From positions 248,001-312,000 of IMG/VR virus record IMGVR_UViG_3300017917_001342: 64,000 bases of DNA. One strand, written 5' to 3'. The position numbers and the translations under genes are program-made. Of this stretch, positions 6,401 through 63,723 are shown in pieces (within the stretch, counting starts at the first letter, position 1; each line of letters starts with the position of its first letter). The notes under the pieces were generated by a model, which had not been told where the DNA came from, searched no databases, and was given only the letters and a program-made list of their open reading frames with translations.

Positions 6401-8639
6401 TGTCACTACCAGTAATCGTACAGTTACCTTTGGTGTTAACTTTAACGGTCTTGGTGGCACATTTCAGTTAGCTGACAATTTTATTCAAGCAGCGGCGCAG
6501 TCATTTATAATAACCAACGGTACAGTTGATTTCAATAATGTAACTTATAGTTTAGGTGCATTGACATTTGTAACAGGTACAAAGTCTTATATTAACTACG
6601 GTGGCACACTGGCACCCGCATCAGTTCTACATACATCTGGCAATGTAATATTAGATACAGGTGCATTGATAACAACTACGGGATCTTATACATTTACTAG
6701 TGGTAATATTATATTAAATAACGGTGTTAATTTATCTGTTGGATCGTTTATTTCTAATAACAATAACACTCGTTTAATTGCGTTTGGTACTGGTTCGATT
6801 ACTGTAAACGGCACCGGTACAATATGGAACGTGGCGGGTACTACTGGATTAAGTTATACTGGTACCAGTAACATTATTATATCTAACAATACAGCAACCG
6901 CAGCTACTATTAGTAACAACACCGGTACCGCTGCAAATGCTATGAATTTCAATTTTATCAATGGCACATACACATTAACGCTTCCAGTTACTGGGGTCTT
7001 TAATAATTTAAACTTTACTGGGTTTGCCGGTATAGTTGCATTTTCAAATAGATTGCAAACATTATATGGTAATTTGATAATTGGACCTAATACTTCGTCT
7101 ACTGGAACTAGCAGTGCTAATGGTGTAACATGGACTGCTACCAGTGGCACTAGAACTATTACTACTAATGGAAGAACAATTAACTTTGGTATTACTATAA
7201 ATGGTGTAGGACAAACTGTACGATTAACTGATGCACTTGTACAAGGTTCATCTCAGTATCTATATCTAACCAATGGTACATTAGATCTAGCAGGTTATTC
7301 AAACAGCTTTGGTGTGTTAAGTCTTGCAACAGGCAATCGTTCATTTATAAACGGTAATATCAACTGTACCACAGTGAATCATGACCGTGGTGACTTAACT
7401 GTAAATCCAGCAAATACTGTAATTGCGACCGGTGCATATAATCTTACAATAGGTAATCTTACCATCAATAGCGATGCTACATTATCAGTTGGTTCAATGA
7501 TATTCGCAGTTGGTGCGAAGTCTATTGCATTTAACACAGGTCGTATTAACTTAACAGGCACAGGTACTGTTTGGAATAGCAGTCTTCTTACTACTTTTAG
7601 TTACACAGGTACTAGCAATATTAGATTAACCAATAGCGGTTCTACAGCAACAACTATAACAACTGGTGCTATGACTGCTGCACAGGCATTGAATTACTAT
7701 GTAACTGCCGGTACTTATACGCTAACACTAACTAATGGTAATGTTTATAGAGATTTAAATTTTACTGGGTTTGCCGGTACTGTTGCGTTATCTGCAACTA
7801 CCCACACAATGTATGGCAATCTTACATTGGGACCTAGTACCAACACCAGTGCTACAGCCGGTACAAATAATTTTGCATGGACATCAACTAGCGGTATCAG
7901 AACTATCACTACCAACAGTCGTACAGCTAATTTTGGTATAAACATCAACGGCGCAGGTCAAACTGTACAATTAGCCGATAACTTTACACAGGGTGCAACA
8001 CAGGTTACAACATTAACTGCCGGCACATTAGATATCAACGGTAAAACACTAACTGCTGGTGCAACATTTGCAGCACCGGGTGCAGTTGCAAAAAATATAA
8101 CATTTAATAGTGGAACACTTATTTGTACTGCATCAACAACTACTGCATTTAATGCCAGTGGTTCAAACTTAACTACCACGGCTGGTACCGGTAACGGTGT
8201 AATATCGATGTCGGGTGCAACTGCTAAAACATTTGTAGGCGGCGGTGTTAATTATGCAGCAACACTTAGCCAAGACGGTCTAGGCAATTTGACTATAACT
8301 GGTAACAATACATTTGCAAATATACGTAACACAGTACAACCAACTGCGGTATTGTTTACAGCTAATAGTACCAATACATTTAGTAATTTTTCTCTAAGCG
8401 GTACATCTAGCAATTTAGTAACTATTACTAGTCCTACTGCATTTACTCACACATTGAGTAAATCCGGAAGCGATGTTCAAGTTTCGTATTGTGCAATAAG
8501 TTATTCAAATGCCACAGGTGGTGCAACATGGCGGGCACCAGGTAACTTAGGTAACCTCAACAACAATTTCAATACTGGATGGAATTTTTCGCCCACTTCT
8601 ACTACGGTAGTTCTCAGCAACATGATAGCATTCTTTTAA
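3432..8639 (+). CDS. Large T/G/S/N-rich beta-solenoid virion/adhesin protein with about 250-aa internal repeats
   Basis: N-terminus MADRYWVGGTGDW; about 6 copies of IAFGTGSIT..GTVWN..LSYTG.SNI; DNA repeat period 759 bp (5882/6641). Confidence 0.75.
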   Translation: MADRYWVGGTGDWSGTNTTNWSTASGGAGGASVPTIADNVFFDQNSDLAGAAFVVTITQSASSLNFTVQNLDSAMTLAGSNNLEIDGNLSLPATNFTATYTGNLTFNSSSPRTVNTNGVTLACNIFINMSPSTLTLQAALTTTGSVTLSVGTLILGGFALTCASFLSSNSATRSITFGTTGSINLSGSGTVWNTSTTTGFTYTGTSNVRLTNSGSTTTAITTGNLSSSQALNFNVTAGTYSLTLGSTAVFNNLNFTGFSGSFDMAAISATVYGNTTFSNTMTTSSTTGVLTLSPSSGGKTITSNGNSLALALTLSGTGSTLQLVDNLTITKAFTYSGNTLDLNSNSLSVQSFASPSGTRVIAFGTGSITTTGTGTVWNVSGTIGLSYTGISNITISNNTATAVTITNTATAASAMNFNIVNGTYALTLTSGNSYRNLNFTGFSGTWSPAATTHTMYGNLTISATTQTISPATAGNDTITFASTSGTNIITTNNWVINCGIAINGAGGTVQFADLFGQGPSYSLKLTNGTLDINSQSTSAGIFTILSGTHAISNGILTCASVTHTSGDLSIGTGYNVVCNGLYTFTAGSITINDGVNLSINSMSSSNTNTRSIAFGTGSITTTGTGTVWSVTGTTGLSYTGISNIIISNNTATSITITNTTSAASALNFYFINGTYNLLLTTGNVYNDLNFTGFAGAVLIGTNTNTLYGNLIVSNTASVSGSAATTNFAFAATGVTRTITTGNRTVNFGVSFNGVGSTFQLADNFIQSVGQYFQIVNGTIDFNNVTYSLGTLVFVNGTKSYINYGGTLAPAAIIHTSGNVTLDTGAVITTAGSYTFSAGTITLNNGVNLSVGSFISSNNNTRLIAFGTSAIIVTGTATVWNVTGTTGLSYNGTSNIVVSNTTTTGITISNNTGTAANAMNFNFINGTYALTFPNTGGNFNDLNFTGFAGTADLVTTTHTIYGNLIVGSTATITGTGGTGNFIFSATSGTRTVTTSNRTVTFGVNFNGLGGTFQLADNFIQAAAQSFIITNGTVDFNNVTYSLGALTFVTGTKSYINYGGTLAPASVLHTSGNVILDTGALITTTGSYTFTSGNIILNNGVNLSVGSFISNNNNTRLIAFGTGSITVNGTGTIWNVAGTTGLSYTGTSNIIISNNTATAATISNNTGTAANAMNFNFINGTYTLTLPVTGVFNNLNFTGFAGIVAFSNRLQTLYGNLIIGPNTSSTGTSSANGVTWTATSGTRTITTNGRTINFGITINGVGQTVRLTDALVQGSSQYLYLTNGTLDLAGYSNSFGVLSLATGNRSFINGNINCTTVNHDRGDLTVNPANTVIATGAYNLTIGNLTINSDATLSVGSMIFAVGAKSIAFNTGRINLTGTGTVWNSSLLTTFSYTGTSNIRLTNSGSTATTITTGAMTAAQALNYYVTAGTYTLTLTNGNVYRDLNFTGFAGTVALSATTHTMYGNLTLGPSTNTSATAGTNNFAWTSTSGIRTITTNSRTANFGININGAGQTVQLADNFTQGATQVTTLTAGTLDINGKTLTAGATFAAPGAVAKNITFNSGTLICTASTTTAFNASGSNLTTTAGTGNGVISMSGATAKTFVGGGVNYAATLSQDGLGNLTITGNNTFANIRNTVQPTAVLFTANSTNTFSNFSLSGTSSNLVTITSPTAFTHTLSKSGSDVQVSYCAISYSNATGGATWRAPGNLGNLNNNFNTGWNFSPTSTTVVLSNMIAFF

Positions 8640-10796: not shown

Positions 10797-12986
10797 TTAT
10801 TGTGGTACTTCGTCATCCATACCAGCAGTAAGCATGTTAAACGTATAGGTTGTGTCTACGGCATCAATATAGTCTACCAGTGCTGAAAGTTTTTCTTCGG
10901 TCATTGATTTACTGTAATAGCTAATACCGTAGTCAATATGCTTGAGCATGGAATATTTCTTACCGATGAATTCTGCCAGTATCACACGATCGCTGTTGAA
11001 TGTGGGTTCTTCAACCTTTACGCTAAAGTATCTGCAAAGATCTGTGATCATTGATGTGTTAGACGATCGCGAACTGCGAAGATGAATTAGATCGCTGAAG
11101 AATTTAATAAAATCGCTGTCTTTGTATTTCAAACGCTGTGATAGCGAATGAAACGAACCACCAGTTAGATTGTTGACAACTGAACTACCAATGGTTTTTC
11201 CAACTACTGTTTCAATTGCAGTGAGTTCAACGTTCTTAGCAATGCTGTTTAGATATTCTGAGTCTGTCGACAACCGAACAGCATGCGATTTTAGAAAATG
11301 TCCAAGGTGTACCCAATGAGCATTGCCTTTGACATTTTCCAAGTTCTTGCCACGAATACCATAGACTTTGATATTATTGGGAATCAGCTTCAATGTTTTT
11401 GCATGTTCCAAAACACGTTGAACGCCACCAACTGATGACGGGTGTTCACGTGTTACAATCACTTCCCACCCGTGCATAGGCAAGTAATAACAAATGTTTG
11501 TTTCAGACGCGATCACTTCGCTCGCCGGCGTCCAAGCTTTTTTACCACCGTCGACTTTGCAGTTCATCAGCCAAACTTCTGGCGGCTTAGTTCGAGTCTT
11601 CTTTTCCGGTGCAGCAAGTTCGCTGGTCAGCATATACTTGGGATGACCAAGCAGATTCAAAATAGTGTTCATGTCATCGTTATGCTTGAACACAACAATG
11701 TGATTTTTCAACAGTTTGGCAACATGATATTCTTTGACACGAGTGTGACTACCGCGTTTGGTATCATCAAACATAATAACAGTGTTTTCGGAACAGTTGA
11801 TATGCGGTTTAAGTGTTGCGTTTGCTGACTTTTTATCAATTGAAAATACACGGACCCCAAGCGAATCGTTTGAAATTCGATTAGCTGTTGCCAAATCTGC
11901 CAGATTAAGAATAAAGCTTTGGCTTTTGATTACTTCACCGCTGTGAACCGGCTTGTCATAGTCGTTATAGATTTTGCTAAACACAGAACCAAGGTCTTTG
12001 TCGTTAAACACTGCACCGTAGGCCTTACGTGCTTCCCAACGTGTGGGTTTGGATTCAACTGCATCCCACAGTGTGTGTTTGAGATCATTAACAACTGAAA
12101 TCAAACGATTGACAATGTTTGTGCTAGTGCGAGCATCATAGCCAATGCTTTCACGGCTAGCAGCCACTTCAAGATCGCCGATGTCAAATTCAATAACCAA
12201 CGGCAATTCGTTCATAGAATAGATAATGTCGATTTGATCCTGTGCAATAGCAGCCAAATCAATGCTATAGACATTGATTGGATATAGCACACCGCCCATC
12301 AGTGCCTGGAGAGATTCACCGTTCCAAAACCGCTTGCTCCAGATACGCCATCCTTTACCTGTGTAAGCAGCCGGTGTCATGAGTACATAGCTGATAGCAG
12401 TACCAGTTTGCACAGGCTTTTGATCAAACCATTGCAGAACTTCGACGGCTTTTGCTGCCCAGCGATTGATATCGCCGTACTTTACGTTGAATTTAACCGT
12501 AACACCGCTGTCGCTGCTAAACCCGCTGCCGACTGTTTCTACTCGCGGTGTATCTGTTGCGTCAAAATACATACGGTATTGAGTTGCAATACCTTTGTGC
12601 CGGCTGGTAACAAAAAACTCATTGGTATAGCTGAACGGACTCTTGCTGCCAAGTCCAAGCTGACCTACGTAGTCATTGCTAGAAGTTTTGGTGCTGGCGA
12701 AATACCGAGTGTAGATAGCATGTACATCTGCGTCGCTCATGCCAGTACCGTAATCAGTGATACTAAACCACTGTTCGTCAACAGTTGGCAAATGCATTTC
12801 CCAGGGATTTGTGTTTTTAGCTGCAACATGACTGTCGCGAGCATTACAGCTCAGTTCTCGAATCACTGCGCGAATCTTGTCGCTATACAAGCCGTCGCTA
12901 AGAATGCGGAAAGCTTTGCCTGTAGCAGCAATAGTAAATGCATCACCTTTGCCGGCAACGGTTGCAACGGTATCATTGATCTTCAT
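10797..12986 (-). CDS. rIIA: rIIA-like protein (N-terminal GHKL ATPase)
   Basis: LYSDKIRAVIRELSCNARDSH, DYGTGMS, STK, GQLGLGSKSPFSY. Confidence 0.8.
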   Translation of the reverse strand: MKINDTVATVAGKGDAFTIAATGKAFRILSDGLYSDKIRAVIRELSCNARDSHVAAKNTNPWEMHLPTVDEQWFSITDYGTGMSDADVHAIYTRYFASTKTSSNDYVGQLGLGSKSPFSYTNEFFVTSRHKGIATQYRMYFDATDTPRVETVGSGFSSDSGVTVKFNVKYGDINRWAAKAVEVLQWFDQKPVQTGTAISYVLMTPAAYTGKGWRIWSKRFWNGESLQALMGGVLYPINVYSIDLAAIAQDQIDIIYSMNELPLVIEFDIGDLEVAASRESIGYDARTSTNIVNRLISVVNDLKHTLWDAVESKPTRWEARKAYGAVFNDKDLGSVFSKIYNDYDKPVHSGEVIKSQSFILNLADLATANRISNDSLGVRVFSIDKKSANATLKPHINCSENTVIMFDDTKRGSHTRVKEYHVAKLLKNHIVVFKHNDDMNTILNLLGHPKYMLTSELAAPEKKTRTKPPEVWLMNCKVDGGKKAWTPASEVIASETNICYYLPMHGWEVIVTREHPSSVGGVQRVLEHAKTLKLIPNNIKVYGIRGKNLENVKGNAHWVHLGHFLKSHAVRLSTDSEYLNSIAKNVELTAIETVVGKTIGSSVVNNLTGGSFHSLSQRLKYKDSDFIKFFSDLIHLRSSRSSNTSMITDLCRYFSVKVEEPTFNSDRVILAEFIGKKYSMLKHIDYGISYYSKSMTEEKLSALVDYIDAVDTTYTFNMLTAGMDDEVPQ

Positions 12987-14002: not shown

Positions 14003-14365
14003 TTAGTCTTGATTGCGGTTTAGGTGACTTAGCCATACCATTTCAAAAAGCATTCTGTCATCGTTAGTTAGTTTGACAAAAAATTTACCAAATGATTCAT
14101 TAGCTTCGCCGTTTTCGGAGTGTCTATATTTCCAATCCGTTGCATTGTCAAGACAACCACCCGCTATCAACTGATGTGTTTCTTTACAAAATATAAAATT
14201 TCTAGTGCAATTATGGCATAACCATGTGTCCATAGCATACTCTTCATCTTGAGACCAATTTTGGTCAAATGTGTATTGTATGTCAAATAGACCAATAATC
14301 CTGTGATCAGTTGTAACACCGGGATATTCTGTTATGAAAAATGGGAACAGTTTTTCGTTACTCAT
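14003..14365 (-). CDS. Paralogue-family small protein
   Basis: WLCHNC...DDRMLFEMVW. Confidence 0.65.
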   Translation of the reverse strand: MSNEKLFPFFITEYPGVTTDHRIIGLFDIQYTFDQNWSQDEEYAMDTWLCHNCTRNFIFCKETHQLIAGGCLDNATDWKYRHSENGEANESFGKFFVKLTNDDRMLFEMVWLSHLNRNQD

Positions 14366-14370
14366 TGCAC

Positions 14371-14640
14371 TTACCCCCAAGTTAATTTGAACAGTGCTGC
14401 ATCATCTTTGTCGTAGATACCTATATAAAATGCAGGATCACCAGAGTTTAGTCTAAACTCGCAATATGACGGTTCTTTGATATTTTCATCAAACCATGCT
14501 TGTAATGCATCTAGTTCTTTGTTAGTGCAATGCCTAGCATATATGATACAGTTCCACGATGGATCCCTTGCCTCGGTCCATTGGTTAATAGCCGACATGT
14601 AGTGCGGTTTACCATCGTCGTATCTGTATTCCCATTTCAT
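14371..14640 (-). CDS. Paralogue-family small protein
   Basis: WFDENI...DKDDAALFKLTWG. Confidence 0.7.
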   Translation of the reverse strand: MKWEYRYDDGKPHYMSAINQWTEARDPSWNCIIYARHCTNKELDALQAWFDENIKEPSYCEFRLNSGDPAFYIGIYDKDDAALFKLTWG

Positions 14641-14642
14641 AG

Positions 14643-15056
14643 TCAATCTCGTGTTAGCCTATAGTGCATCCATGCGCTGTTGAGTTCGTCTATCAGTGCA
14701 ATACCATCGTCGTCACATTCTAAAGTACAGCGTTCTAGTTTGAAACTGCTGCCTATTTGTTTAGATATAGTTTCCCTAAACTGTATTACATAGCTGGTAT
14801 AATTTTCTAACGTGTTGTCACTTAGCATTTCAGTCAACCAGTCCGGGTAATAGGTAGTAGACATTTGATCACCACGTGATGTGTTCGACTGCCATTTTAA
14901 TGTTATAGGGTTTTGTATCGCAGCAGATTCAAAAGCCAGTATGGGTATAAAATACTGCAACCACAGTTGATTAACGTCTGCTGACCATTTGATCCACGGC
15001 TTACCTTCGCCGACTGCATGTAATCTAAAAGGACCTACTTGATCAATCACGGACAT
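14643..15056 (-). CDS. Hypothetical protein (divergent family member)
   Basis: Ends WMHYRLTRD; overlaps neighbours. Confidence 0.6.
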   Translation of the reverse strand: MSVIDQVGPFRLHAVGEGKPWIKWSADVNQLWLQYFIPILAFESAAIQNPITLKWQSNTSRGDQMSTTYYPDWLTEMLSDNTLENYTSYVIQFRETISKQIGSSFKLERCTLECDDDGIALIDELNSAWMHYRLTRD

Positions 15057-15291
15057 TGTTATTCCACACTAGTTTGAACATGAACACATCGTTATTGTCG
15101 ATGAATTCTATGTTGGTTTGATTTTTTAATATACCAGTTTCGCTACCTGGTTCCACTTCTATTAGCGTAGATCTAAGTGTCCATCGCTGCGGTTCCGGTA
15201 ACGGTGGATTTGGCATCATAGCATCTAACCACTCGCCTATTTCACCTAGAGGTATAGTGCCGCCTAGTTTTACAACTTTTATATCTGTCAT
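15043..15291 (-). CDS. Paralogue-family small protein
   Basis: EWLDA...FIDNNDVFMFKLVW; ATGA overlap with upstream gene. Confidence 0.7.
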   Translation of the reverse strand: MTDIKVVKLGGTIPLGEIGEWLDAMMPNPPLPEPQRWTLRSTLIEVEPGSETGILKNQTNIEFIDNNDVFMFKLVWNNNVRD

Positions 15292-15626
15292 GCCCACCTC
15301 ATTAAAAATGCCATTGCATCAGCACGACTGCGAAATCTAAATTCGCCATGCAATTCACTAACAACTGTGAGATTGTGCGGCTTAGTTAAACGATAGGTCT
15401 TAACAGTGCAGTTTACCCACACTGTTTTTTTAAAATTAGGTATGTTGTCTTTGATCCATTCATACCTATCTCTATAATCGTTAACGTATTTGATACCAAC
15501 AGTTTCAGTCTTAACTGCATGCCGATTAAAAATTAAACTATACGTGTATCTCAACGGCCTGAATAGCCGATGTAACGCAGATGGTGCATTAGCCAGTGAT
15601 GTCACGATAGTCGAAATTTTCATCAT
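15288..15626 (-). CDS. Paralogue-family small protein
   Basis: EWIKDNI...FRFRSRADAMAFLMRWA; start uncertain. Confidence 0.7.
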   Translation of the reverse strand: MMKISTIVTSLANAPSALHRLFRPLRYTYSLIFNRHAVKTETVGIKYVNDYRDRYEWIKDNIPNFKKTVWVNCTVKTYRLTKPHNLTVVSELHGEFRFRSRADAMAFLMRWA

Positions 15627-15912
15627 ACTTTTCCCAGGTGTTGTTTTCGTAGTCCCAGTGTCGGTTATCATGAAAGTCGATGACCAATCCATACCCAAGA
15701 ATATCTAGATGCAGTCTAACACCGGCATGGTCTTGACCTCTAATAGCAGTGTCAAGAGTGATAGCAAACAGATCTGTCATTTGACCCCAGCGGCTAAATT
15801 GAACCTCTAGGTATTTGTGACCAAACAGATGTTTGTTGTAAACTATGTAATCTTTTTGTGGTTTGGGTTTTGATTTAAAATAGTTGATTATGGAGAAATG
15901 GATGTGAAACAT
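15589..15912 (-). CDS. Hypothetical phage protein
   Basis: DHAG...HDNRHWDYENNTW. Confidence 0.65.
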   Translation of the reverse strand: MFHIHFSIINYFKSKPKPQKDYIVYNKHLFGHKYLEVQFSRWGQMTDLFAITLDTAIRGQDHAGVRLHLDILGYGLVIDFHDNRHWDYENNTWEKYDENFDYRDITG

Positions 15913-15961
15913 GATAGCCGGCCATTATGCTGAATGTTTATTGAGTGTACAGTACGGGTTC

Positions 15962-16264
15962 TTATACGTCAAGTTTTATAGTAGTTGCGGGCCAATTCAT
16001 ACGAAACCACATTATGTCTTCTTGATTTTCAAACAGTACAAACCAATGGTCGCTAGGTGATGTTCTCACTGTGCTCATAAACCATCGCTTTGGCAAATTT
16101 TCAAGTGACAGGTCTTTTAGATCTGGTAAGTACCCAAGATTGGTTTCGCACCATTCAAATACATCATCTACATCACCTTGCGGTATGTTTAACAAGTGCC
16201 AACCGTTGTCTAACAATCGGTGCATTATTTTTTGTCGTAGCTGTATCAATGTGCCTATTCCCAT
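15962..16264 (-). CDS. Paralogue-family small protein
   Basis: EWCETNLG...FENQEDIMWFRMNW. Confidence 0.7.
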   Translation of the reverse strand: MGIGTLIQLRQKIMHRLLDNGWHLLNIPQGDVDDVFEWCETNLGYLPDLKDLSLENLPKRWFMSTVRTSPSDHWFVLFENQEDIMWFRMNWPATTIKLDV

Positions 16265-16680
16265 TAGTCTACCTGATACCATCCCAGTTCATACAGGTCT
16301 GAACGAATTTCGTCTGTGACTGTGCCTAGTTCCACTGTGTTGTTGTCGTTCATATAGAAGTCAAGATAACCTCCATATTCTCGCATATCTGCAACAACAC
16401 CACCGGCATAGCGCCAGCTACAACACCAAGTGTCGTTTTTCAAAATTGTTAACATATCTCTGCGTTGCCAAGTAGTATTACACAATGCTGCATAGAGATT
16501 CTGTGCATAGACATCATTCTTGACTTTTTCGCAAAGCGTATCGCTGGTACGCAGGTCGTACTCGAGATTATTCTCTTGCCATTCTGGATCAGTTTCGCGT
16601 TTACGAGTTGCTAAATTGATTTCCTTGTATATTTCAGTCAGCACATCGTATCGCTGTTCACTTGTGCGCAACTTGGTCAT
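16264..16680 (-). CDS. Hypothetical phage protein
   Basis: YAQNLYAALCN...SWRYAGGVVADMR; ATGA overlap. Confidence 0.7.
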   Translation of the reverse strand: MTKLRTSEQRYDVLTEIYKEINLATRKRETDPEWQENNLEYDLRTSDTLCEKVKNDVYAQNLYAALCNTTWQRRDMLTILKNDTWCCSWRYAGGVVADMREYGGYLDFYMNDNNTVELGTVTDEIRSDLYELGWYQVD

Positions 16681-16919
16681 TTCCATGTTAACCTATATTC
16701 AACCCAGGTAGGTTCATCCATAAATGCAATTATAACATCTACATACGAATAAGTTGTAGCTTCTGCGTAATGTTCGAATTCAATTTTACACCCACGGTCT
16801 TCTAGCCATTCTATTATATCTAGATACGGGCCGTATATTTCCTGCATCTTAGGTATGGTTAGATACTCGTGCTTATCTCGTGTAATTTTACCTATGTTTA
16901 CTCGTATCAATGTGTTCAT
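16677..16919 (-). CDS. Paralogue-family small protein (YRLxW subtype)
   Basis: WLEDRG...DEPTWVEYRLTWK; similar to 54312-54566. Confidence 0.7.
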   Translation of the reverse strand: MNTLIRVNIGKITRDKHEYLTIPKMQEIYGPYLDIIEWLEDRGCKIEFEHYAEATTYSYVDVIIAFMDEPTWVEYRLTWK

Positions 16920-17164
16920 GACCATGTTAATGTAAACAGTGCAAAATCTTCACGGTGTTTAAAATAAAAGTTAGAACCATCTTCCATCCAACGTATGGTT
17001 TTTGCCTTAGCAGTCATACTGGAGTAGTATTCTTTTTTACTCGAACCTTCTATACCAAAGTGTTCGTTGCACCAAGCAAGTACTATACTGTATGGAGTAT
17101 CTAACCGTTTAAAGCTAGCTACATAAAAAGAAACACCTGCAAAAATTGTTACAGTCTCGGCCAT
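16916..17164 (-). CDS. Paralogue-family small protein
   Basis: WCNEHFG...FKHREDFALFTLTWS; start uncertain. Confidence 0.65.
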   Translation of the reverse strand: MAETVTIFAGVSFYVASFKRLDTPYSIVLAWCNEHFGIEGSSKKEYYSSMTAKAKTIRWMEDGSNFYFKHREDFALFTLTWS

Positions 17165-17397
17165 CCGGTTAGATCTTCTGCACTTAGTATTATAAGCATA
17201 AGCTCTTCTTGACTAATGTCATTATCTTTACGACGATAGCTGCGATCTTTAACCCACTTTTTGTTATTGCCTTCAATTGTCAATACATAATCGCATTTTT
17301 GCATTAGTTTATGATCGTTATCACCAAATATCACGTACTTTGGTAAGTCGTAGTATTCAGCTACATGATCGTTTAAGATACCATAAAACTTTGTCAT
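17149..17397 (-). CDS. Hypothetical protein
   Basis: ATGA overlap, GAGGTG SD. Confidence 0.6.
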   Translation of the reverse strand: MTKFYGILNDHVAEYYDLPKYVIFGDNDHKLMQKCDYVLTIEGNNKKWVKDRSYRRKDNDISQEELMLIILSAEDLTGWPRL

Positions 17398-17555
17398 AGC
17401 CACCTCAATCTAAAAAACGTCCATGCTGCGTCTGTGTAAAACATAATAGTTTCCCAACCATTGTAAGACCAATCCGCTGGCTCTAAACTGTTGTCGCACC
17501 AAGATATAATTGTATACATAGGTGCTGCACCGTTGTATTGCCATTCAACTGTCAT
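17394..17555 (-). CDS. 53-aa minimal paralogue-family protein (not in ORF track)
   Basis: MTVEWQY...SWCDNSL...FYTDAAWTFFRLRWL; ATGA overlaps at both ends. Confidence 0.7.
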   Translation of the reverse strand: MTVEWQYNGAAPMYTIISWCDNSLEPADWSYNGWETIMFYTDAAWTFFRLRWL

Positions 17556-17932
17556 TGCCAACACATTTTAAATGCCAGTGCGTCTTCATTATTTGCAAAC
17601 CAAAAATCTGTATGACTGCATACCCAACTGCCGTTTTTAAGATTGTCGTAACACCAATCGAGTGCCTGCGAATACAAATCGTCTCGTCTACTTACTTTAA
17701 CGTGCAAATATCCGAGACTCGTTAGATATTCTGGATGATGGTAAACACGACGATTATATACTCGCAAGAAATATCTGTAATGGTCTTTGGTAAGTTTAAC
17801 ACGCCCGCGCCAGCCATTTTTTAACCCAAAAATACCAGCTGCTGGCCCAACCATTGGTTGAACACCTATAATTTCATGTGCAATGAGTGTTGGTAAAACA
17901 CGGCGAATTATTGGTAACAGTACAGAGTTCAT
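17552..17932 (-). CDS. Fusion of a major-capsid (gp23 Gol-region-like) fragment and the paralogue-family domain
   Basis: VLLPIIRRVLPTLIAHEIIGVQPMVGPAAGIF plus WCYDNL...FANNEDALAFKMCW. Confidence 0.75.
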   Translation of the reverse strand: MNSVLLPIIRRVLPTLIAHEIIGVQPMVGPAAGIFGLKNGWRGRVKLTKDHYRYFLRVYNRRVYHHPEYLTSLGYLHVKVSRRDDLYSQALDWCYDNLKNGSWVCSHTDFWFANNEDALAFKMCWQ

Positions 17933-18165
17933 TCCCACCTCAGAATCATATACATGCGATCTTCTTCATGCAAGAAGTTAAACTGTAGATCATTGGCATA
18001 CCATCTACGTGGCGGAATAGTATCGCAGAGACTTGGATCGCCGAACTGTTCAACTGCCCAGAGGTACATAGCTTTCCATTTCTCTTTGCGTTTGCTGTAC
18101 AGGCCCAAATCCGGCCTATACCGATAGTACGTATCGCCGTGCCTCTGAATTTCACCCGTTTGCAT
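17929..18165 (-). CDS. Paralogue-family small protein
   Basis: WAVEQFG...FLHEEDRMYMILRWE. Confidence 0.7.
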   Translation of the reverse strand: MQTGEIQRHGDTYYRYRPDLGLYSKRKEKWKAMYLWAVEQFGDPSLCDTIPPRRWYANDLQFNFLHEEDRMYMILRWE

Positions 18166-18166
18166 T

Positions 18167-18427
18167 TTATAGCCATATCAGTTTAAACAACACTACATCT
18201 TCGTCAAGTTCAAGTCGCACAAATCCCATACCAACCCAATAGCGACCGTGGCAGTTGAGTTCACACCAGTCAAACAGTCTAGCACGAGTCTCTTCTCTCA
18301 AAACTTTGCCATTGTCAATGGGATCTCGAATGAAGATCTGTGTACCAAGGGATTGATCAAACAGCAGTTTCTCCTTTGTAACAGTAGGTTCAACTGTGAG
18401 CAATCTTTTACTGTCAGTGTTTGTCAT
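18167..18427 (-). CDS. Paralogue-family small protein
   Basis: WCELNC...LELDEDVVLFKLIWL. Confidence 0.7.
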   Translation of the reverse strand: MTNTDSKRLLTVEPTVTKEKLLFDQSLGTQIFIRDPIDNGKVLREETRARLFDWCELNCHGRYWVGMGFVRLELDEDVVLFKLIWL

Positions 18428-18645
18428 TTAGACCACGTTAATGTAAATGCCAGTCGCTGTTCTTCTGTAACCCAATCCTCAAATTCGACCCAGAACGTAG
18501 TGCGACGACGAGCTCTAAAATTGAAATTGTTAGCAATTACCCAACCATTTCCGGCCATTCTACTTCTAGCTGTGCCTATGTTGGTGTCTAACCATGCAAT
18601 TAACTCGTCTTTGTCGCAATCGTTATTAAAGATATATTTGATCAT
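18424..18645 (-). CDS. Paralogue-family small protein
   Basis: WLDTNIG...EEQRLAFTLTWSK. Confidence 0.7.
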   Translation of the reverse strand: MIKYIFNNDCDKDELIAWLDTNIGTARSRMAGNGWVIANNFNFRARRRTTFWVEFEDWVTEEQRLAFTLTWSK

Positions 18646-18866
18646 CCCCAACGCATCCTGAACCACAGTGTGTCATCAGCTGATTCAAAGCAGAATTCAT
18701 TGTGATTTCGCGGCCATGCACTGATTGTACGAACATAGTATTGACCTAACATTTCATTGTCAACCCAATCTAAAACAGCAGTTAGCTCTGTTCTTGAACT
18801 CAGTGTAATTCTAACTGCGTTCCAATCTGCAATGTTGTCAGGCGGTAGAATTACACGTTTAGCCAT
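18642..18866 (-). CDS. Paralogue-family small protein
   Basis: WVDNEM...FESADDTLWFRMRWG. Confidence 0.7.
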   Translation of the reverse strand: MAKRVILPPDNIADWNAVRITLSSRTELTAVLDWVDNEMLGQYYVRTISAWPRNHNEFCFESADDTLWFRMRWG

Positions 18867-19253: not shown

Positions 19254-19643
19254 TCAAAGTTTTCTAAAATCAACACGTTCGCTGTAGTAGCCATTGCTAG
19301 TACCATACCAACGCAGATGCACACCACCTTTGATAGTGTGCAGTTTGTAATAGGTCCAAGTGTAGCTTTCGTCGTATTCGTTGCGAGGACCGTCGTGCTT
19401 TATCTGATGTTCAAGATTAGTAACTTCATCTGCAATCAGTATCGGCGAACCAACAAGATCGTCAAAATCACCGTTGTAATCTTCAAGCCATACAGATTCG
19501 CAGCAGCTTTGATCGTGGTACAACTGATAACGGTCACCGTCAACAGTTTCAAATTCGAGAATTTCTCGATCACTAGACAGTTCAACTCGTGACAAAGTTT
19601 TACCTACTAATTCGGAAATGTTGTGTTCGTCGTACCAGCCCAT
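19254..19643 (-). CDS. Conserved hypothetical phage protein
   Basis: HDQSCCESV, WTYY, WYGTSNGYYSE; AGGA SD. Confidence 0.75.
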   Translation of the reverse strand: MGWYDEHNISELVGKTLSRVELSSDREILEFETVDGDRYQLYHDQSCCESVWLEDYNGDFDDLVGSPILIADEVTNLEHQIKHDGPRNEYDESYTWTYYKLHTIKGGVHLRWYGTSNGYYSERVDFRKL

Positions 19644-19653
19644 GATTATTCCT

Positions 19654-19851
19654 TTACCAACTGTCGTAATCTGTAAAATCTTTCCATACACCAGACCCTT
19701 CATCTGTTTCTGCAAATGCAATAACAGTCTGTCCGATGTTTGTCTGTGTGACTTTTATTTCTATAGGAATGTTTCGAGGCCCGAGCGTATCAGCCCAGGC
19801 CGCCAAACGTCTAATGTCTTCAAGTCGCAATTTAACACTAGTATCTGTCAT
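19654..19851 (-). CDS. Hypothetical protein
   Basis: Fits operon packing; ends DFTDYDSW. Confidence 0.6.
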   Translation of the reverse strand: MTDTSVKLRLEDIRRLAAWADTLGPRNIPIEIKVTQTNIGQTVIAFAETDEGSGVWKDFTDYDSW

Positions 19852-23594: not shown

Positions 23595-23758
23595 GATAAA
23601 AACACTCCTGTATAACCCCAGCTGACTTCGGTTGATCGTCTAGCAATCTCAACCTGTCGCACTTCTCGCCAATCATCTTTGTAATCGCCGCCCTCGTAGA
23701 AAACTTCATACTCGGGCGGCATTTTTTGTAACTGTTCAATTAAGTCTTTAACATTCAT
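23591..23758 (-). CDS. 55-aa hypothetical protein (not in ORF track)
   Basis: MNVKDLIEQLQKMPPEYEV; ATGA overlaps at both ends. Confidence 0.6.
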   Translation of the reverse strand: MNVKDLIEQLQKMPPEYEVFYEGGDYKDDWREVRQVEIARRSTEVSWGYTGVFLS

Positions 23759-24825
23759 GCTTGCACTCCATTAACTTCGTGTTGACGACCTGCACCATAC
23801 ATCCAATGCTTTTGCGTTGCAACGTGATTTGCACGAACAAACTTTGCAACGCTGGTCTTGAAGTCTTTGTATGCAAATGCATCTGCAACTCGCACTACAT
23901 AGCCTTCGTGAACATCACGATCAGTTTTTTCGTTGTACAGCGTCTTGATTGCTGCTTCATCCCAGATACCATCATAGATAACCGGAACCGTCGGCATATC
24001 AAGCAGTGCAAACCATTCTACAGTTTCGTCCCAGCTAAGACATTCGTTGCGATCAGTCCAGATGCTAAACCCAAGCAGGTAACCAGGCAAGTTATCATAG
24101 CGGATGCTATGCACAGCATAGAGGTTTTCTGCACATACACGCCAACCTTCTGGCAACTCATAGCTGCGTTGCATCCAAAAGTTCTTTGCCCAATCTCTAG
24201 TATAATGGCTACGACCGTCAACACTGCGAGCATGACAGTAGTCGCGATAACCACTGAAATTCTCACCGTCCATCTTGCGAGTAACAATCACACGGCGCCC
24301 CGCAAATACACCAGTGTCTTTCATAACACGGTCATCATCGGTTGCACCGGGGCTCCACGGCAAGTGATAGGTACGAGGATACTTAACGTATTCTACAAAC
24401 AGTGTGTCAAAGTCGGGATGATAACGAAGAATCTTTTGTACAGATTCGTCGTAGAACAACGGACCTTTGGTACGCTTGCCGTTGTCAAGAATCACATTGC
24501 CCCACTTATCGTAAACATGATCGTGGTACATGTCCTCAGGCAGCACGATTTTCTCGATCTTAGCAGCAATACGAATGTCTTCGACACTCAGGGTAGTAAC
24601 TTCTGCATTGCTGTGGCAACCCATTGGAAAACCATTGCTGTTACCATGATCGCACAGTGTTGCACCATTGTCAAGATAATAGCCACCATCTGTCCAAAGA
24701 CGGCGTTCGATAATGTGATGTGCATCAAGCCGAACACCATCGCGTGCTTCGTTACCGCAGATCACACAGCGATGGCCATCACGCTCAAAAACAGCGTTTC
24801 TAAATTGTTCGCGTGTGAGTAGCAT
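23755..24825 (-). CDS. HNH domain fused to ATP-dependent RNA ligase
   Basis: CVICG..DAHHI..NGATLC..CH; KYPRTYHLPWS, KMDGEN (motif I), EGYVVR, AKFVR. Confidence 0.8.
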   Translation of the reverse strand: MLLTREQFRNAVFERDGHRCVICGNEARDGVRLDAHHIIERRLWTDGGYYLDNGATLCDHGNSNGFPMGCHSNAEVTTLSVEDIRIAAKIEKIVLPEDMYHDHVYDKWGNVILDNGKRTKGPLFYDESVQKILRYHPDFDTLFVEYVKYPRTYHLPWSPGATDDDRVMKDTGVFAGRRVIVTRKMDGENFSGYRDYCHARSVDGRSHYTRDWAKNFWMQRSYELPEGWRVCAENLYAVHSIRYDNLPGYLLGFSIWTDRNECLSWDETVEWFALLDMPTVPVIYDGIWDEAAIKTLYNEKTDRDVHEGYVVRVADAFAYKDFKTSVAKFVRANHVATQKHWMYGAGRQHEVNGVQA

Positions 24826-34671: not shown

Positions 34672-34983
34672 TCAAGCAGCTACGGGCCATTTAGATTTAA
34701 ATTCTTCTAGTTGGAGGTCGGTTGATAGATACAGTATACCACTGTCTACAGCAGAACCTCTGTACTTCATACAGTCCCAGGCCCACGGCATCTTTTTACC
34801 AGTGTATTCGTAATAGTTTATCCAATGCATAGATTCAATGCCAGAGCCCCATTGTGACCAACACCAGTCTCTTGCATCAAAAAATTCCAGAATTCCCCAA
34901 CTGATTTGATGCATCATATAACCGTGTAGTTGATTTCGATTACCAACTGGCTTAACAGTCCAATCCATTAATATTTTCCCCAT
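34672..34983 (-). CDS. Paralogue-family small protein
   Basis: WCWSQWG...LYLSTDLQLEEFKSKW. Confidence 0.65.
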   Translation of the reverse strand: MGKILMDWTVKPVGNRNQLHGYMMHQISWGILEFFDARDWCWSQWGSGIESMHWINYYEYTGKKMPWAWDCMKYRGSAVDSGILYLSTDLQLEEFKSKWPVAA

Positions 34984-35285
34984 GTAAATCTAAACAGCAT
35001 AGCATCTTCTTCTGTGAGAAACCATACATGGCTTTCAACCCAAGCGTAGTTTGAGCCATAGGCATCATAGCACCATTGCATGATAGCAGGTGCATCTTTT
35101 GCTGCGGCTTTGTCAAGTTTGATTCCGTAATATCCTGCGTCTTTAAATGCAGCAGACGACACTATGCGTTTAGGATCAAGCTTGGTAAACACTAGACGAT
35201 ATCGATCGCGCGAAGGTACGGCATTGCGACCAACATCACGATGCTTTGAAAACCGAGCAGGTGTTCTAAGATTCTTATTGATCAT
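34968..35285 (-). CDS. Paralogue-family small protein
   Basis: WCYDAYG...FLTEEDAMLFRFTWG. Confidence 0.7.
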   Translation of the reverse strand: MINKNLRTPARFSKHRDVGRNAVPSRDRYRLVFTKLDPKRIVSSAAFKDAGYYGIKLDKAAAKDAPAIMQWCYDAYGSNYAWVESHVWFLTEEDAMLFRFTWGKY

Positions 35286-45221: not shown

Positions 45222-45277
45222 ATATCCCTCACGACAATTAACTATTGTACCGAATAACTGCTATTTGTCAACGACTA

Positions 45278-46435: not shown

Positions 46436-46557
46436 CTAATGATTCTCCGGGCTATGCTTGGAATATTTAGTCAAAATGACTGTACAGATACCAAATCAAT
46501 AAATATCGAGTAGTTGCATATTTGCACTACATAGATTATAATTTCTTTATAAGGCAA

Positions 46558-46600
46558 AGTGGTCTAAGACGCTCATCCCACTCTAAATACTCTGCGTGTC
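46558..46600 (+). ncRNA. Candidate preQ1-I-like riboswitch
   Basis: AGUGG-UCUAAGACGCUCAUC-CCACU-CUAAAUA..GCGU pseudoknot directly upstream of queD. Confidence 0.5.
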
Positions 46601-46627
46601 GTCAAACTTACTTATGAAAGGCAAGAG

Positions 46628-47143: not shown

Positions 47144-47146
47144 AAT

Positions 47147-47173
47147 AAAAGCCCCGCTTAGCGGGGCTTTTTT
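47147..47173. terminator. Bidirectional terminator
   Basis: aaaagccccgc-tta-gcggggctttttt. Confidence 0.85.
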
Positions 47174-47822: not shown

Positions 47823-47868
47823 GTGATTTGCCTTTGTTTTTATTAAACTATAAAGACAATTGGCACGT

Positions 47869-50264: not shown

Positions 50265-50268
50265 CCAA

Positions 50269-50276
50269 TATTTATA
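50269..50276 (-). promoter_or_regulatory. T4-type late promoter
   Basis: Exact TATAAATA. Confidence 0.65.
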
Positions 50277-50523
50277 AGCAAGATAGCTTGAATAACAGTT
50301 GTTCTTCTTGACTGGCAAACCCTATGTATGCATGATTTGCATCAAACCACCACGCCCAGGGTCCTTGGCAGTTTACATCACACCATTCTATTAATTCATG
50401 TTCTATAGTTGGTATTCTGTTGTCGAAGAGCGATGTATGTTTGTAAACATACGGTACATCATTAGGCGGGAGATTATCCCGCCTAAATTTGCTTTCAACT
50501 GACTTACGCAGGGAAGAAGTCAT
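50272..50523 (-). CDS. Paralogue-family small protein
   Basis: EWCDVNCQGPW...FASQEEQLLFKL. Confidence 0.65.
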   Translation of the reverse strand: MTSSLRKSVESKFRRDNLPPNDVPYVYKHTSLFDNRIPTIEHELIEWCDVNCQGPWAWWFDANHAYIGFASQEEQLLFKLSCL

Positions 50524-51109: not shown

Positions 51110-51196
51110 TTGTTATCTCCTTAGGATATTATTATTTTATAGTCAATAGTGTGCGATTACAATGTGTAGATCTGCATAGTGTATGTGTAAAAGAAT

Positions 51197-51222
51197 AAGG
51201 GCAAGCGTAAAGCTTGCCCTTT
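51197..51222. terminator. Terminator hairpin
   Basis: aagggcaagc-gtaaa-gcttgccctt. Confidence 0.6.
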
Positions 51223-51242
51223 GAGTCACTGTGCAGTGTTGA

Positions 51243-51755: not shown

Positions 51756-51831
51756 AACCCTTTGTGTGTTTGCCTATGCGTTCACACTATAGATATTTGT
51801 TAACCATGTCAACTGGATATTTTGAAAAATC

Positions 51832-54311: not shown

Positions 54312-54566
54312 TTATCCCCAGACAAGTCGGTATTCTGTCCACAACTCGTCATCTAGCCATACAAATATAGTAGTCGCAATCCACGGTTCGCTATTTCTTT
54401 TATAACGAACATGTTCAGTTCCTATGGTAATACCTCGATCTTGTAGCCAAAGATTCTGTTCAACAAGGTTAACATTCTGTAAAAGATCATCGTAATGACG
54501 GCGAGTATGATAACTGCGCCATTCCATATATTGTGGTTCTTCTAAGTGAAGCAATACTCGTTTCAT
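54312..54566 (-). CDS. Paralogue-family small protein (YRLxW subtype)
   Basis: WLQDRG...DDELWTEYRLVWG. Confidence 0.7.
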   Translation of the reverse strand: MKRVLLHLEEPQYMEWRSYHTRRHYDDLLQNVNLVEQNLWLQDRGITIGTEHVRYKRNSEPWIATTIFVWLDDELWTEYRLVWG

Positions 54567-55857: not shown

Positions 55858-56028
55858 TTAACCCCAAGTTAGTTTAAACAGAACAGCGTCATCGAGATTT
55901 TTGAAATACCAATAATGGCCATAGCATTTGTACTTGCCAATGTTTTCGTTTAACCATGGCACAGGTATACCTTTCCATGTAGGTACAAAAACCATATGCC
56001 ATGATTTATCAAGATGACGTTTATTCAT
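55858..56028 (-). CDS. 56-aa minimal paralogue-family protein (not in ORF track)
   Basis: WLNENIG...YFKNLDDAVLFKLTWG. Confidence 0.7.
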   Translation of the reverse strand: MNKRHLDKSWHMVFVPTWKGIPVPWLNENIGKYKCYGHYWYFKNLDDAVLFKLTWG

Positions 56029-56213
56029 CAATCCAGCGATGGACCAGTGTCGTGATCAAGCTCGTAGAACCGAGCATCATCAAGAGTTTTCAGCCAACGA
56101 CCGGTTTCAAACGGATGAGTGATAACATAGATGCTGAGTACAAAAATGTACAAGCCAAGCACAGAAAGAACAACGTCGCGAATAGTTTTAGTAACGTACA
56201 TGTGATGCCCCAA
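56028..56213 (-). CDS. Small membrane protein
   Basis: One TM segment. Confidence 0.5.
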   Translation of the reverse strand: MGHHMYVTKTIRDVVLSVLGLYIFVLSIYVITHPFETGRWLKTLDDARFYELDHDTGPSLD

Positions 56214-58108: not shown

Positions 58109-58405
58109 TCATCTATTATTTTTTAGATGTTGTTCGTACCATTCTTCTAGTCTAGGTACAATACTATGACTATCCATAGTTAATTTAAACAAAAATGCGT
58201 CGTCTGCAGATTGAAAACAGATTGTAACAGGCTGATTTGCTACAACACGGCCTTCTTGGTTTTTTACAAAACTCAGTTTGAATTTCGCAGTACCGTCGCG
58301 GTTAGTACCGTATTCGGCTTTAATCCACTCTATTAAACGACCACCATGGCCAGTCCATATTTCAGTTGGTATACTAACATGGTAAGGTGTGGGGAGATAC
58401 GTCAC
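58109..58405 (-). CDS. Paralogue-family small protein
   Basis: EWIKAEYG...FQSADDAFLFKLT. Confidence 0.65.
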   Translation of the reverse strand: MTYLPTPYHVSIPTEIWTGHGGRLIEWIKAEYGTNRDGTAKFKLSFVKNQEGRVVANQPVTICFQSADDAFLFKLTMDSHSIVPRLEEWYEQHLKNNR

Positions 58406-63718: not shown

Positions 63719-63723
63719 CAGTG

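What the first reader, a model, noticed from the sequence alone, without database searches (positions are those of the whole stretch)
14003..18866. Tandem array of a massively expanded small-protein family (about 20 copies in the window)
Seen: about 13 near-consecutive 53-137-aa ORFs share W-[CL]-x2-[NH]-x-G ... W ... F-x3-[ED]-D/A-x2-F-x-L-x-W at the C-terminus. More copies occur at 22534, 34672, 34968, 50272, 54312, 55858 and 58109, and perhaps 53707. Two minimal copies (17394, 55858) are missing from the ORF track. N-termini are unrelated and I see no obvious DNA-level repeat, so the family looks old and diversified. Inference: one small alpha/beta scaffold reused as a library of adaptors, decoys or anti-defence binders. 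This is my best candidate for an undescribed system; its function cannot be read from the sequence.
Basis: partly seen in the sequence, partly recalled or inferred. Interest (0 to 1): 0.8.

Follow-up and report, generated by a model that had tools for sequence, protein, structure and literature searches.

The report
Undescribed small-protein family in jumbo phage
A giant phage carries 17-18 old, diverged copies of a roughly 55-residue protein domain that no database names; 13 sit in one tightly coupled gene array, and one copy displays the capsid-protein segment that a classic bacterial suicide defence recognises.

Summary
On the minus strand of 14003-18866, 13 of 17 consecutive ORFs share one C-terminal domain. 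Four more firm copies lie at 34968, 50272, 55858 and 58109, and 54312 is probable.

The window comes from a 519-kb jumbo phage related to Agrobacterium phage Atu_ph07.

- **Fold:** a confident beta-alpha-beta-beta-alpha model (pLDDT 91.5). The conserved residues are mostly aromatic and hydrophobic, with helix-end positions; the remaining positions are hypervariable.
- **Genes are real and old:** the pooled dN/dS proxy is 0.18. The paralogues share no DNA similarity, and for 15 of the 17 the best-scoring match lies in another phage rather than in this genome.
- **Spread:** an exhaustive profile search finds 1,604 cluster representatives. Other T4-type phage contigs carry arrays of 10-14 copies.
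- **Annotation:** Pfam, PHROGs, NCBIfam, PDB and the searchable literature have no name for it.
- **One paralogue (17552-17932):** it fuses a predicted-disordered 40-residue tail, homologous to T4 gp23 residues 85-132, to the domain. As I recall it, that span contains the Gol region. The fusion is conserved in distant phages.

Best reading, inferred and not shown: a scaffold for diversified binding or display proteins used in host takeover or counter-defence. It is an undescribed family within a known phenomenon.

The parts
18642..18866 (-). Family member, 74 aa. First gene of the array and the protein modelled.
   Evidence: HMM 69 bits. AF2 pLDDT 91.5, b-a-b-b-a. dN/dS 0.09.
18424..18666 (-). 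Family member. The probable start is the ATG at 18645 (73 aa), which overlaps the upstream stop as ATGA.
   Evidence: HMM 51 bits. Close homologue P0011 starts MIKYIF. ATGA overlap.
18167..18427 (-). Family member, 86 aa.
   Evidence: HMM 45 bits. dN/dS 0.08.
17929..18165 (-). Family member, 78 aa.
   Evidence: HMM 56 bits. dN/dS 0.04.
17552..17938 (-). Fusion paralogue. The probable start is the ATG at 17932 (126 aa). In the numbering of the 128-aa ORF, residues 5-34 are homologous to T4 gp23 residues 93-122 (the Gol-type segment) and are predicted disordered. A linker follows, then the family domain at residues 75-128.
   Evidence: Pfam Gp23 profile positions 5-42, E 2.4e-10. HHalign to T4 gp23 85-132, probability 96.8%. 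AF2: residues 1-43 pLDDT <50, blocks from residue 51 on 81-93. Homologues P0189-P0197, P0034 and L004:10213-10596. dN/dS 0.11.
17394..17564 (-). Minimal family member, 53 aa from the ATG at 17555.
   Evidence: HMM 51 bits. Intact in L007-L009 at 65% identity, dN/dS 0.31 with dS 0.81.
16916..17164 (-). Family member, 82 aa.
   Evidence: HMM 74 bits. Relative P0036 at 45% identity.
16677..16925 (-). Family member, 80-82 aa.
   Evidence: HMM 50 bits. Close homologue P0007.
15962..16282 (-). Family member, 100-106 aa, with a short C-terminal extension after the final W.
   Evidence: HMM 64.5 bits. Close homologue P0004.
15288..15698 (-). Family member with a basic N-terminal extension. The probable start is at 15626 (112 aa).
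   Evidence: HMM 59 bits. The gene is called as 112 aa in L007.
15043..15297 (-). Family member, 82 aa from the ATG at 15291.
   Evidence: HMM 60 bits. Close homologues P0160-P0163.
14371..14646 (-). Family member, 89 aa from the ATG at 14640.
   Evidence: HMM 43 bits. Close homologues P0154 and P0155.
14003..14380 (-). Family member and last gene of the array (120 aa from the ATG at 14365). It is the most divergent array copy.
   Evidence: HMM 42 bits with the window profile, but only 12.7 bits with the broad profile.
34968..35285 (-). Dispersed family member, 105 aa.
   Evidence: Not in the seed set. E 3.5e-8. Relative P0069 at 48% identity.
50272..50523 (-). Dispersed family member, 83 aa. 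The terminal W is replaced, giving ...KLSCL.
   Evidence: Not in the seed set. E 1.8e-4, then 63 bits after iteration.
55858..56031 (-). Dispersed minimal family member, 57 aa.
   Evidence: Not in the seed set. E 2.7e-5. 37 bits with the broad profile. Relatives P0071 and P0038.
58109..58405 (-). Dispersed family member, 98 aa, with a C-terminal extension.
   Evidence: Not in the seed set. E 1.6e-6. 25.7 bits with the broad profile.
54312..54566 (-). Probable divergent member, 84 aa.
   Evidence: 7.8-11 bits against decoys at about 8 bits. C-terminal ...DDELWTEYRLVWG aligns to the motif. Same Atlas neighbourhood as a firm member.
14643..15056 (-). Unrelated ORF inside the array, 137 aa. Not a member. 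The same holds for 15589-15912, 16264-16686 and 17149-17403.
   Evidence: HMM E >1. HHalign probability <1% for 14643, 16264 and 17149; 15589 rests on the HMM searches alone. All four are intact and under purifying selection.

Best explanation
**Shown.** The array is a co-directional, translationally coupled block of genes for small cytoplasmic proteins. They share a domain of about 55 residues: strand, helix ending in W-C-x2-N-x-G, a two-stranded hairpin carrying W and F-x-F, then a helix [ED]-D-A-x2-F-K-L-x-W that ends the protein. The conserved residues are mostly aromatic or hydrophobic, plus positions at the helix ends. All other positions, and the N-terminal extensions, differ freely between paralogues. 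The family is old, is under purifying selection, and is widespread in T4-type and jumbo phages, often as arrays.

**Inferred.** The domain is a stable scaffold. Its variable surface and N-terminal tail give each paralogue its own binding or display specificity. The proteins act stoichiometrically on host proteins, or on proteins of competing phages, during host takeover or counter-defence.

The clearest case is the paralogue at 17552-17932. It presents a flexible copy of the most conserved segment of the T4-type major capsid protein. In T4 that segment binds EF-Tu and triggers the Lit suicide protease. The copy could act as a decoy or competitor for capsid-sensing immunity, or as an EF-Tu ligand.
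For: - **Family is real:** HMM searches with decoy controls, and 1,604 external representatives whose inspected top hits carry the same motif.
- **Fold:** AF2 pLDDT 91.5, pTM 0.78, E16-20 H25-38 E42-49 E54-60 H63-73.
- **Core-only conservation:** W34 100%, W51 91%, F60 97%, D65 91%, F69 96%, L71 82%, W73 98%. Most other positions have entropy above 3 bits.
- **Real genes:** the array ORFs are intact in three strain-level relatives. The pooled pN/pS ratio (a dN/dS proxy) is 0.18 for family genes and 0.09 for neighbours.
- **Old subfamilies:** for 15 of the 17 paralogues the best-scoring match lies in another phage (26-58% identity over the aligned part). In-genome paralogues score only 19-40 bits, and there is no DNA similarity between them.
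- **Arrays elsewhere:** L002, L004, L010, L011 and L012 carry 10-14 copies each, in L011 next to a family-B DNA polymerase.
- **Coupling:** 8 of 13 array genes end W-x-TGA with an ATGA overlap, and in several the codons AGG-TGG form a Shine-Dalgarno-like site for the next gene.
- **Fusion paralogue:** homology to T4 gp23 is confined to residues 85-132. The tail is predicted disordered on a folded body. The architecture is conserved down to 29-39% overall identity, with the capsid-like segment the best-kept part at 45-60%.
- **Gol biology:** the Gol region binds EF-Tu, activates Lit and is the most conserved region of gp23 (PMC3014915).
Against: - There is no direct evidence for any binding partner, expression time or phenotype.
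- The fold is a generic ferredoxin/ACT-like half-sandwich and carries no functional signal: best PDB match Z 7.3, which is background level.
- Only the fusion subfamily shows recognisable mimicry. The other N-termini match nothing.
- dN/dS is low, so there is no sign of the rapid positive selection typical of arms-race genes between close strains.
- The first 74.5 kb of the cultivated relative Atu_ph07 holds at most one weak copy, so the expansion is not a fixed feature of this lineage.
- The exact Gol coordinates (T4 gp23 93-122) are from my memory. The paper I could read says only that Gol is a 29-residue region in the first quarter of gp23.
Confidence: 0.42

Rival explanations
1. The proteins are virion or assembly factors: small proteins that join the prohead, scaffold or capsid. 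The gp23-like tail of the fusion paralogue would let it co-assemble with, or cap, the major capsid protein.
For: The fusion carries a segment of the capsid protein's N-terminal region. In Atu_ph07, 102 of 131 virion proteins have no assigned function (PMC6102473).
Against: The array lies among chaperone, RNA-repair and topoisomerase genes, not among head genes. The T4 late-promoter motif TATAAATA is rare in the window, with 2 matches against 4.3 expected. The capsid-like tail is predicted disordered and no other part of gp23 is present. In L011 the array adjoins the DNA polymerase gene.
Confidence: 0.13
2. The proteins modulate translation. Family members would bind EF-Tu or other translation factors or ribosomes to retune host protein synthesis.
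For: In T4 the Gol segment binds EF-Tu domains II and III (PMC3014915). The Atlas places a cluster labelled RF3_C fragment near the family. BFVD lists a 243-aa CcrBL9 'peptidyl-tRNA hydrolase' as a structural match. The phage encodes a tmRNA, a tRNA, a CCA-adding enzyme and DnaK.
Against: The RF3_C and Pth leads were not verified and may reflect only a shared ferredoxin-like fold. Sixteen of the 17 window members have no translation-related segment. Nothing conserved on the surface suggests one common partner.
Confidence: 0.12
3. The proteins are ACT-like small-molecule sensors or sponges. The domain would oligomerise and bind a metabolite or a signalling nucleotide.
For: The best structural neighbours are ACT domains (Z 7.2-7.3). 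Natural two-domain proteins exist, which is compatible with dimer formation.
Against: The Z-scores are at background level for this search. No ACT Pfam family matches. The beta1-alpha1 loop, where ACT domains bind ligand, is hypervariable, and the fourth strand is missing. A single common ligand would not explain 17 paralogues with diverged surfaces.
Confidence: 0.08
4. The ORFs are non-functional, or are selfish duplicated filler.
For: There is no known function and no annotation.
Against: The genes show purifying selection and are intact in relatives. Most paralogues have their own, better-scoring relatives in other phages. The fold prediction is confident and the genes are translationally coupled.
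Confidence: 0.03

Closest known systems
[quoted passage not shown]
   Same: Residues 5-34 of the paralogue at 17552-17938 (128-aa ORF numbering) align to T4 gp23 residues 93-122 and keep the conserved RR-x2-P-x-LIA-x4-GVQPM-x2-P pattern.
   Different: Here the segment is a free, predicted-disordered tail on an unrelated small domain, not part of a capsid protein. Whether it binds EF-Tu, and whether it triggers or blocks a Lit-type protease, is untested. It applies to one subfamily only.
ACT and other ferredoxin-like b-a-b-b-a-b regulatory domains
   Same: Two helices pack on one face of a small antiparallel sheet. ACT domains are the top structural neighbours.
   Different: There is no sequence relationship, the terminal strand is absent, no ligand loop is conserved, and the match strength is at background level.
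Lineage-specific expansions of small domains in jumbo phages, such as the roughly 35-copy zinc ribbon of Bacillus phage G (PMC7824862)
   Same: Many paralogues of one small domain sit in a giant phage genome with unknown roles.
   Different: This is a different domain. The copies are ancient subfamilies shared across phage lineages, not a recent burst within one genome. That review does not mention the family under any of the five search terms I tried.
Clusters of small accessory genes between conserved genes in T4-type phage genomes (from my own knowledge)
   Same: Co-directional runs of small overlapping ORFs lie next to replication and repair genes.
   Different: Here most of the run consists of one homologous family rather than unrelated ORFs.

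Membership tests
ACT domain (Pfam ACT families) | Sequence match to an ACT profile | tested here: not met
   None of the 17 window members and none of 125 wider members match any ACT family at the listing thresholds used, E <= 1 and E <= 0.01.
ACT domain (Pfam ACT families) | Complete b-a-b-b-a-b fold with a conserved ligand-binding loop after strand 1 | tested here: not met
   The model ends after helix 2 with no fourth strand. Positions 21-24 have entropy above 3.5 bits. The structural Z of 7.3 is at background level.
Pfam DUF6275 (PF19791) | Score at or above the gathering threshold (22.6 bits) | tested here: not met
   One window member, scanned in both sets, reaches 17.1 bits; no other sequence matches.
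T4-type major capsid protein Gp23 (PF07068) | Full-length capsid domain | tested here: not met
   Only profile positions 5-42 of 376 match, in one paralogue. HHalign finds only T4 gp23 residues 85-132.
Gol peptide (functional class) | Homology to the gp23 segment that defines Gol | tested here: met
   The alignment to T4 gp23 covers residues 93-122. That numbering of Gol is from memory. PMC3014915 confirms a 29-residue region in the first quarter of gp23 that is also its most conserved region.
Gol peptide (functional class) | Binds EF-Tu and activates Lit cleavage of EF-Tu | not testable with these tools
   This needs biochemistry or genetics.
Known phage protein families (PHROGs v4) and NCBIfam | Profile match | tested here: not met
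   None of 125 family sequences match any PHROG at E <= 1e-3. None of the 17 window members match NCBIfam at E <= 0.01.
Proteins with a solved structure, including anti-restriction DNA mimics and anti-CRISPRs in the PDB | Sequence or fold match | tested here: not met
   The family profile against PDB sequences gives a best E of 0.24. Foldseek against the PDB gives a best E of 0.044.
Immunity-protein arrays of polymorphic toxin systems (SUKH/Imm type) | Match to an Imm or SUKH family and adjacency to a toxin gene | tested here: not met
   No such Pfam hits. The Pfam and PHROG scans of array neighbours and of the window's larger ORFs named no toxin domain.

The most novel reading that the evidence does not exclude
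The family is a general phage 'display scaffold'. A stable mini-domain would present short peptide mimics, and the gp23-tail paralogue would be a capsid-PAMP decoy. A soluble, probably early-made copy of the capsid protein's most conserved segment would pre-occupy or blunt capsid-sensing abortive-infection systems (Lit-type proteases and other capsid sensors), or capture EF-Tu before the real capsid protein appears. The other paralogues would hold analogous mimics that have not yet been recognised.
Probability: 0.15. Interest if true: 0.85.

Novelty: new variant of a known kind. Interest (0 to 1): 0.62.

Why it matters
Small proteins of unknown function make up much of the coding capacity of large phages. 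This analysis defines one such family clearly:

- It has a usable profile, a confident fold and more than 1,600 cluster representatives.
- It recurs as tandem arrays in several T4-type phage lineages.
- Pfam, PHROGs and NCBIfam do not contain it.

That makes it a concrete target for structural work, interaction screens and defence-panel screens.

The capsid-segment fusion offers a direct experiment on an old question. Why is the Gol segment the most conserved part of T4-type capsid proteins, and can phages counter immunity that senses it?

Tried and rejected
- **Nucleotide search of the array against 50,697 phage records:** no match.
- **tblastn of two outside members against the same records:** no match, because the proteins are too short and too diverged.
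- **The search for related loci:** A narrower alignment gave only 3 viral loci and nothing in bacterial genomes.
- **Promoter and terminator scan:** not above the shuffled background in any useful way.
- **T4 late-promoter motif:** uninformative.
- **Recovering the window phage's own capsid protein, to compare it with the fusion tail:** it was not among the 120 listed hits.
- **Exact Gol coordinates in the literature:** the primary papers are not held.
- **CcrBL9 'Pth + domain' lead:** a Pth2 query did not bring up that phage among the 40 of 53 records listed, so the lead stays unverified.
- **Atu_ph07 copy count:** I scanned only the first 74.5 kb of 490 kb and did not fetch the rest.
- **L004 fusion against Acinetobacter phage capsid proteins:** the apparent 94%-length tblastn alignment did not recur in two direct comparisons of the fusion with T4 gp23. 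Only residues 85-132 of gp23 are homologous.
- **Rejected as members:** 22534, 34672, 53707, 14643, 15589, 16264 and 17149.

Full report
**Context.** The window belongs to a very large phage. It encodes:
- a T4-type topoisomerase II (59897-63131, minus strand), whose large subunit is 54-56% identical to those of Agrobacterium phage Atu_ph07 and Sinorhizobium phage Phosso;
- DnaK, ClpX, a CCA-adding enzyme and an HNH-RNA ligase;
- a tRNA-Met and an alphaproteobacterial-type permuted tmRNA.

The protein database places the window's proteins on one contig of 518,643 bp. The array has no nucleotide-level relative among 50,697 deposited phage records.

**Checking the observation.** The ORF listing shows an unbroken run of minus-strand ORFs across 14003-18866.

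- An HMM built from the 13, run against all 480 six-frame ORFs of at least 35 aa, recovered four ORFs that were not in the seed set: 34968, 58109, 55858 and 50272, at E 3.5e-8 to 1.8e-4.
- Five shuffled copies of the ORF set peaked at 10.5 bits.
- Three more iterations stayed at 17 members.
- A profile built mostly from outside sequences again recovered the same 17.
- 54312 is borderline in the HMMs, but it has the C-terminal motif and the same Atlas neighbourhood as a firm member. I count it as probable.
- 22534, 34672 and 53707 are not supported.
- Four ORFs inside the array are unrelated: 14643-15056, 15589-15912, 16264-16686 and 17149-17403. The window-built HMMs reject all four, and profile-profile comparison rejects the three that were tested.
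- No tandem DNA repeat exists, and the paralogues share no DNA similarity beyond overlapping ends.

**The genes are real.** Three metagenomic contigs from strain-level relatives (L007-L009) carry the same block in the same order, with the array ORFs intact.

- Nei-Gojobori estimates against L007 range from 0.04 to 0.31 for most family genes. The pooled pN/pS ratio is 0.18 for family genes and 0.09 for neighbours.
- Exceptions: 15043 gives 0.96 on only nine substitutions, and 14003 and 14371 are identical between the two genomes, so they give no estimate.
- The 53-aa minimal copy at 17394 and the adjacent fusion gene form a patch of much higher divergence: dS of about 0.8 against 0.04-0.38 in the other genes compared, and 65% and 85% protein identity. 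A different allele was evidently recombined in, and it still shows purifying selection.

**Gene organisation.**
- Eight of the 13 array genes end W-x-TGA, with the next ATG overlapping as ATGA.
- In several, the codons for the conserved R-W (AGG TGG) form a Shine-Dalgarno-like site for the downstream gene.
- The GTG starts that the ORF listing reports for 15043, 17149 and 17552 lie inside that AGGTGG and are probably artefacts. The corresponding genes called on the database contigs have the lengths expected from the later ATG starts.
- The block therefore looks like one translationally coupled unit.

**What the domain is.** AlphaFold2, run with a 125-sequence alignment, gives a confident model of the 74-aa member: pLDDT 91.5, strand 16-20, helix 25-38, hairpin 42-49/54-60, helix 63-73.

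- Conserved positions: W34 100%, C35 78%, G40 71%, W51 91%, F60 97%, D65 91%, F69 96%, L71 82%, W73 98%. I read these as core and helix-cap residues. I could not compute solvent exposure from the model.
- Nearly every other position has entropy above 3 bits. No conserved set of polar residues suggests catalysis.
- Foldseek finds nothing in the PDB below E 0.04.
- A Foldseek-independent search puts ACT domains first at Z 7.3, which the tool's own notes class as background.
- BFVD and AlphaFold-DB cluster matches are almost all uncharacterised phage or bacterial proteins, including one from Atu_ph07.
- No recurrent hit exists in Pfam (17 window and 125 wider members), PHROGs, NCBIfam or PDB sequences.

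**Distribution.** The window-only profile, scored against 1.84 billion cluster representatives, returns 1,604 proteins at E <= 1e-3.

- The top 150 are almost all proteins of 43-115 aa. Some are natural two-domain proteins.
- Four long proteins with many matched stretches also appear. The one I read (P0006) is a spurious eukaryotic repeat, and I presume the same for the other three.
- None of the ten top hits whose clusters I looked up carries an informative name.
- Other large-phage contigs hold arrays of their own: a 155-kb contig (L002), a 77.6-kb contig encoding seryl-tRNA synthetase and Pth2 (L004), and IMG/VR contigs with 10-14 copies in 4-6 kb. In one of these the array lies beside a family-B DNA polymerase.
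- The first 74.5 kb of Atu_ph07 has at most one weak copy.
- For 15 of the 17 window paralogues the best-scoring match lies in another phage (26-58% identity over the aligned part), while the best in-genome paralogue scores only 19-40 bits; 14003 has no outside match in the set and 18424 only ties.
- The set is therefore a collection of old subfamilies, not a recent burst.

**The fusion paralogue.** The member at 17552-17938 matches Pfam Gp23 over its first 40 residues (E 2.4e-10).

- Aligned with the T4 record, its residues 5-34 correspond to gp23 residues 93-122 (PAVMGMVRRAIPNLIAFDICGVQPMNSPTG).
- Profile comparison and BLASTP find no other part of gp23.
- As I remember it, 93-122 is the Gol region. 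The review I could read confirms that Gol is a 29-residue stretch in the first quarter of gp23, that it is the protein's most conserved region, that it binds EF-Tu domains II and III, and that it activates the e14 Lit protease (PMC3014915).
- AlphaFold2 predicts this tail as disordered (residues 1-43, pLDDT below 50). The rest of the protein is folded, with ten-residue pLDDT blocks of 81-93 from residue 51 on.
- The architecture recurs at 53-85% identity in related contigs and at 29-39% in distant ones, including L004, where it again sits inside an array.
- In the distant homologues the capsid-like tail is the best-conserved part: 45-60% against 14-33% for the rest.
- None of the deposited phage records holds this fusion at tblastn sensitivity.

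**Interpretation.** What is shown is a real, ancient, widespread and unannotated mini-domain family that occurs in translationally coupled arrays. It has an invariant aromatic and hydrophobic framework, and its other positions and N-terminal tails are variable.

What is inferred is that it serves as a scaffold for diversified binding or display proteins acting on host or rival-phage targets. The gp23-tail paralogue would be a candidate decoy or EF-Tu ligand.

Against an arms-race reading, dN/dS between strains is low, and only one subfamily shows recognisable mimicry. The rivals are a virion or assembly role, translation-factor modulation, and ACT-like ligand binding. None is excluded, and I rate each lower for the reasons given in its entry.

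**Novelty.** Expansions of small domains in jumbo phages are a known phenomenon (PMC7824862), so this is not a new kind of thing. The domain itself and the capsid-segment fusion, however, appear undescribed in every library and in the searchable literature.

Noticed in passing
window 63390-63758 (-): The phage encodes a permuted, alphaproteobacterial-type tmRNA (Rfam alpha_tmRNA 97 bits, tmRNA_permuted 101 bits; ARAGORN tag ANDNVAPSYALAA). This points to an alphaproteobacterial host, in line with the kinship to Atu_ph07 and Phosso.
   Followed up: partly
window 52236-52312 (-): tRNA-Met (CAT) gene.
   Followed up: no
window 17394-17938 (-) against L007:9995-10533: This two-gene patch (the fusion paralogue and the minimal copy) is far more diverged between strain-level relatives than its surroundings: dS about 0.8 against 0.04-0.38 in the other genes compared, and 85% and 65% protein identity against 92-100%. 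It looks like an allele swap by recombination.
   Followed up: partly
window 311-3232 (+) and 3432-8639 (+): A 973-aa protein with extensive collagen triple-helix repeats (Pfam Collagen, E 8e-65) is followed by a 1,735-aa ORF with no PHROG match (it was not scanned against Pfam). They may be fibre or 'hair' proteins like those described for Atu_ph07.
   Followed up: no
window 36769-38622 (-), 42213-43466 (-), 10797-12986 (-): The phage encodes a full-length DnaK/Hsp70 (Pfam 901 bits), a ClpX with its zinc finger, and a 729-aa protein with a GHKL/Hsp90-type ATPase domain. Together these form a sizeable chaperone and unfoldase set.
   Followed up: no
window 23755-24825 (-): An RNA ligase whose N-terminal residues 5-60 also match HNH endonuclease families. 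This is the Rnl2-HNH fusion type noted for jumbo phages in PMC7824862.
   Followed up: no
window 49158-50318 (-): A 386-aa ORF has a weak, sub-threshold match to the PARP catalytic domain (E 7.6e-4, 19.5 bits against a cut-off of 26.7). It may be an ADP-ribosyltransferase.
   Followed up: no
window 15043, 17149, 17552 and similar starts: The GTG starts given by the mechanical ORF list fall inside the upstream gene's AGG-TGG (R-W) codons. The real starts are probably the ATGs two codons later, which overlap the upstream stop as ATGA.
   Followed up: yes
L013:19580-27663 (Atu_ph07 44090-52173): Atu_ph07 has a run of about ten consecutive hypothetical genes of 250-360 aa, most of them about 260 aa. 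It may be a different tandem paralogue family.
   Followed up: no
window 19254-19721 (-): The gene two places upstream of the array is a DUF7448 protein (Pfam E 3.5e-27), conserved in the strain-level relatives.
   Followed up: no
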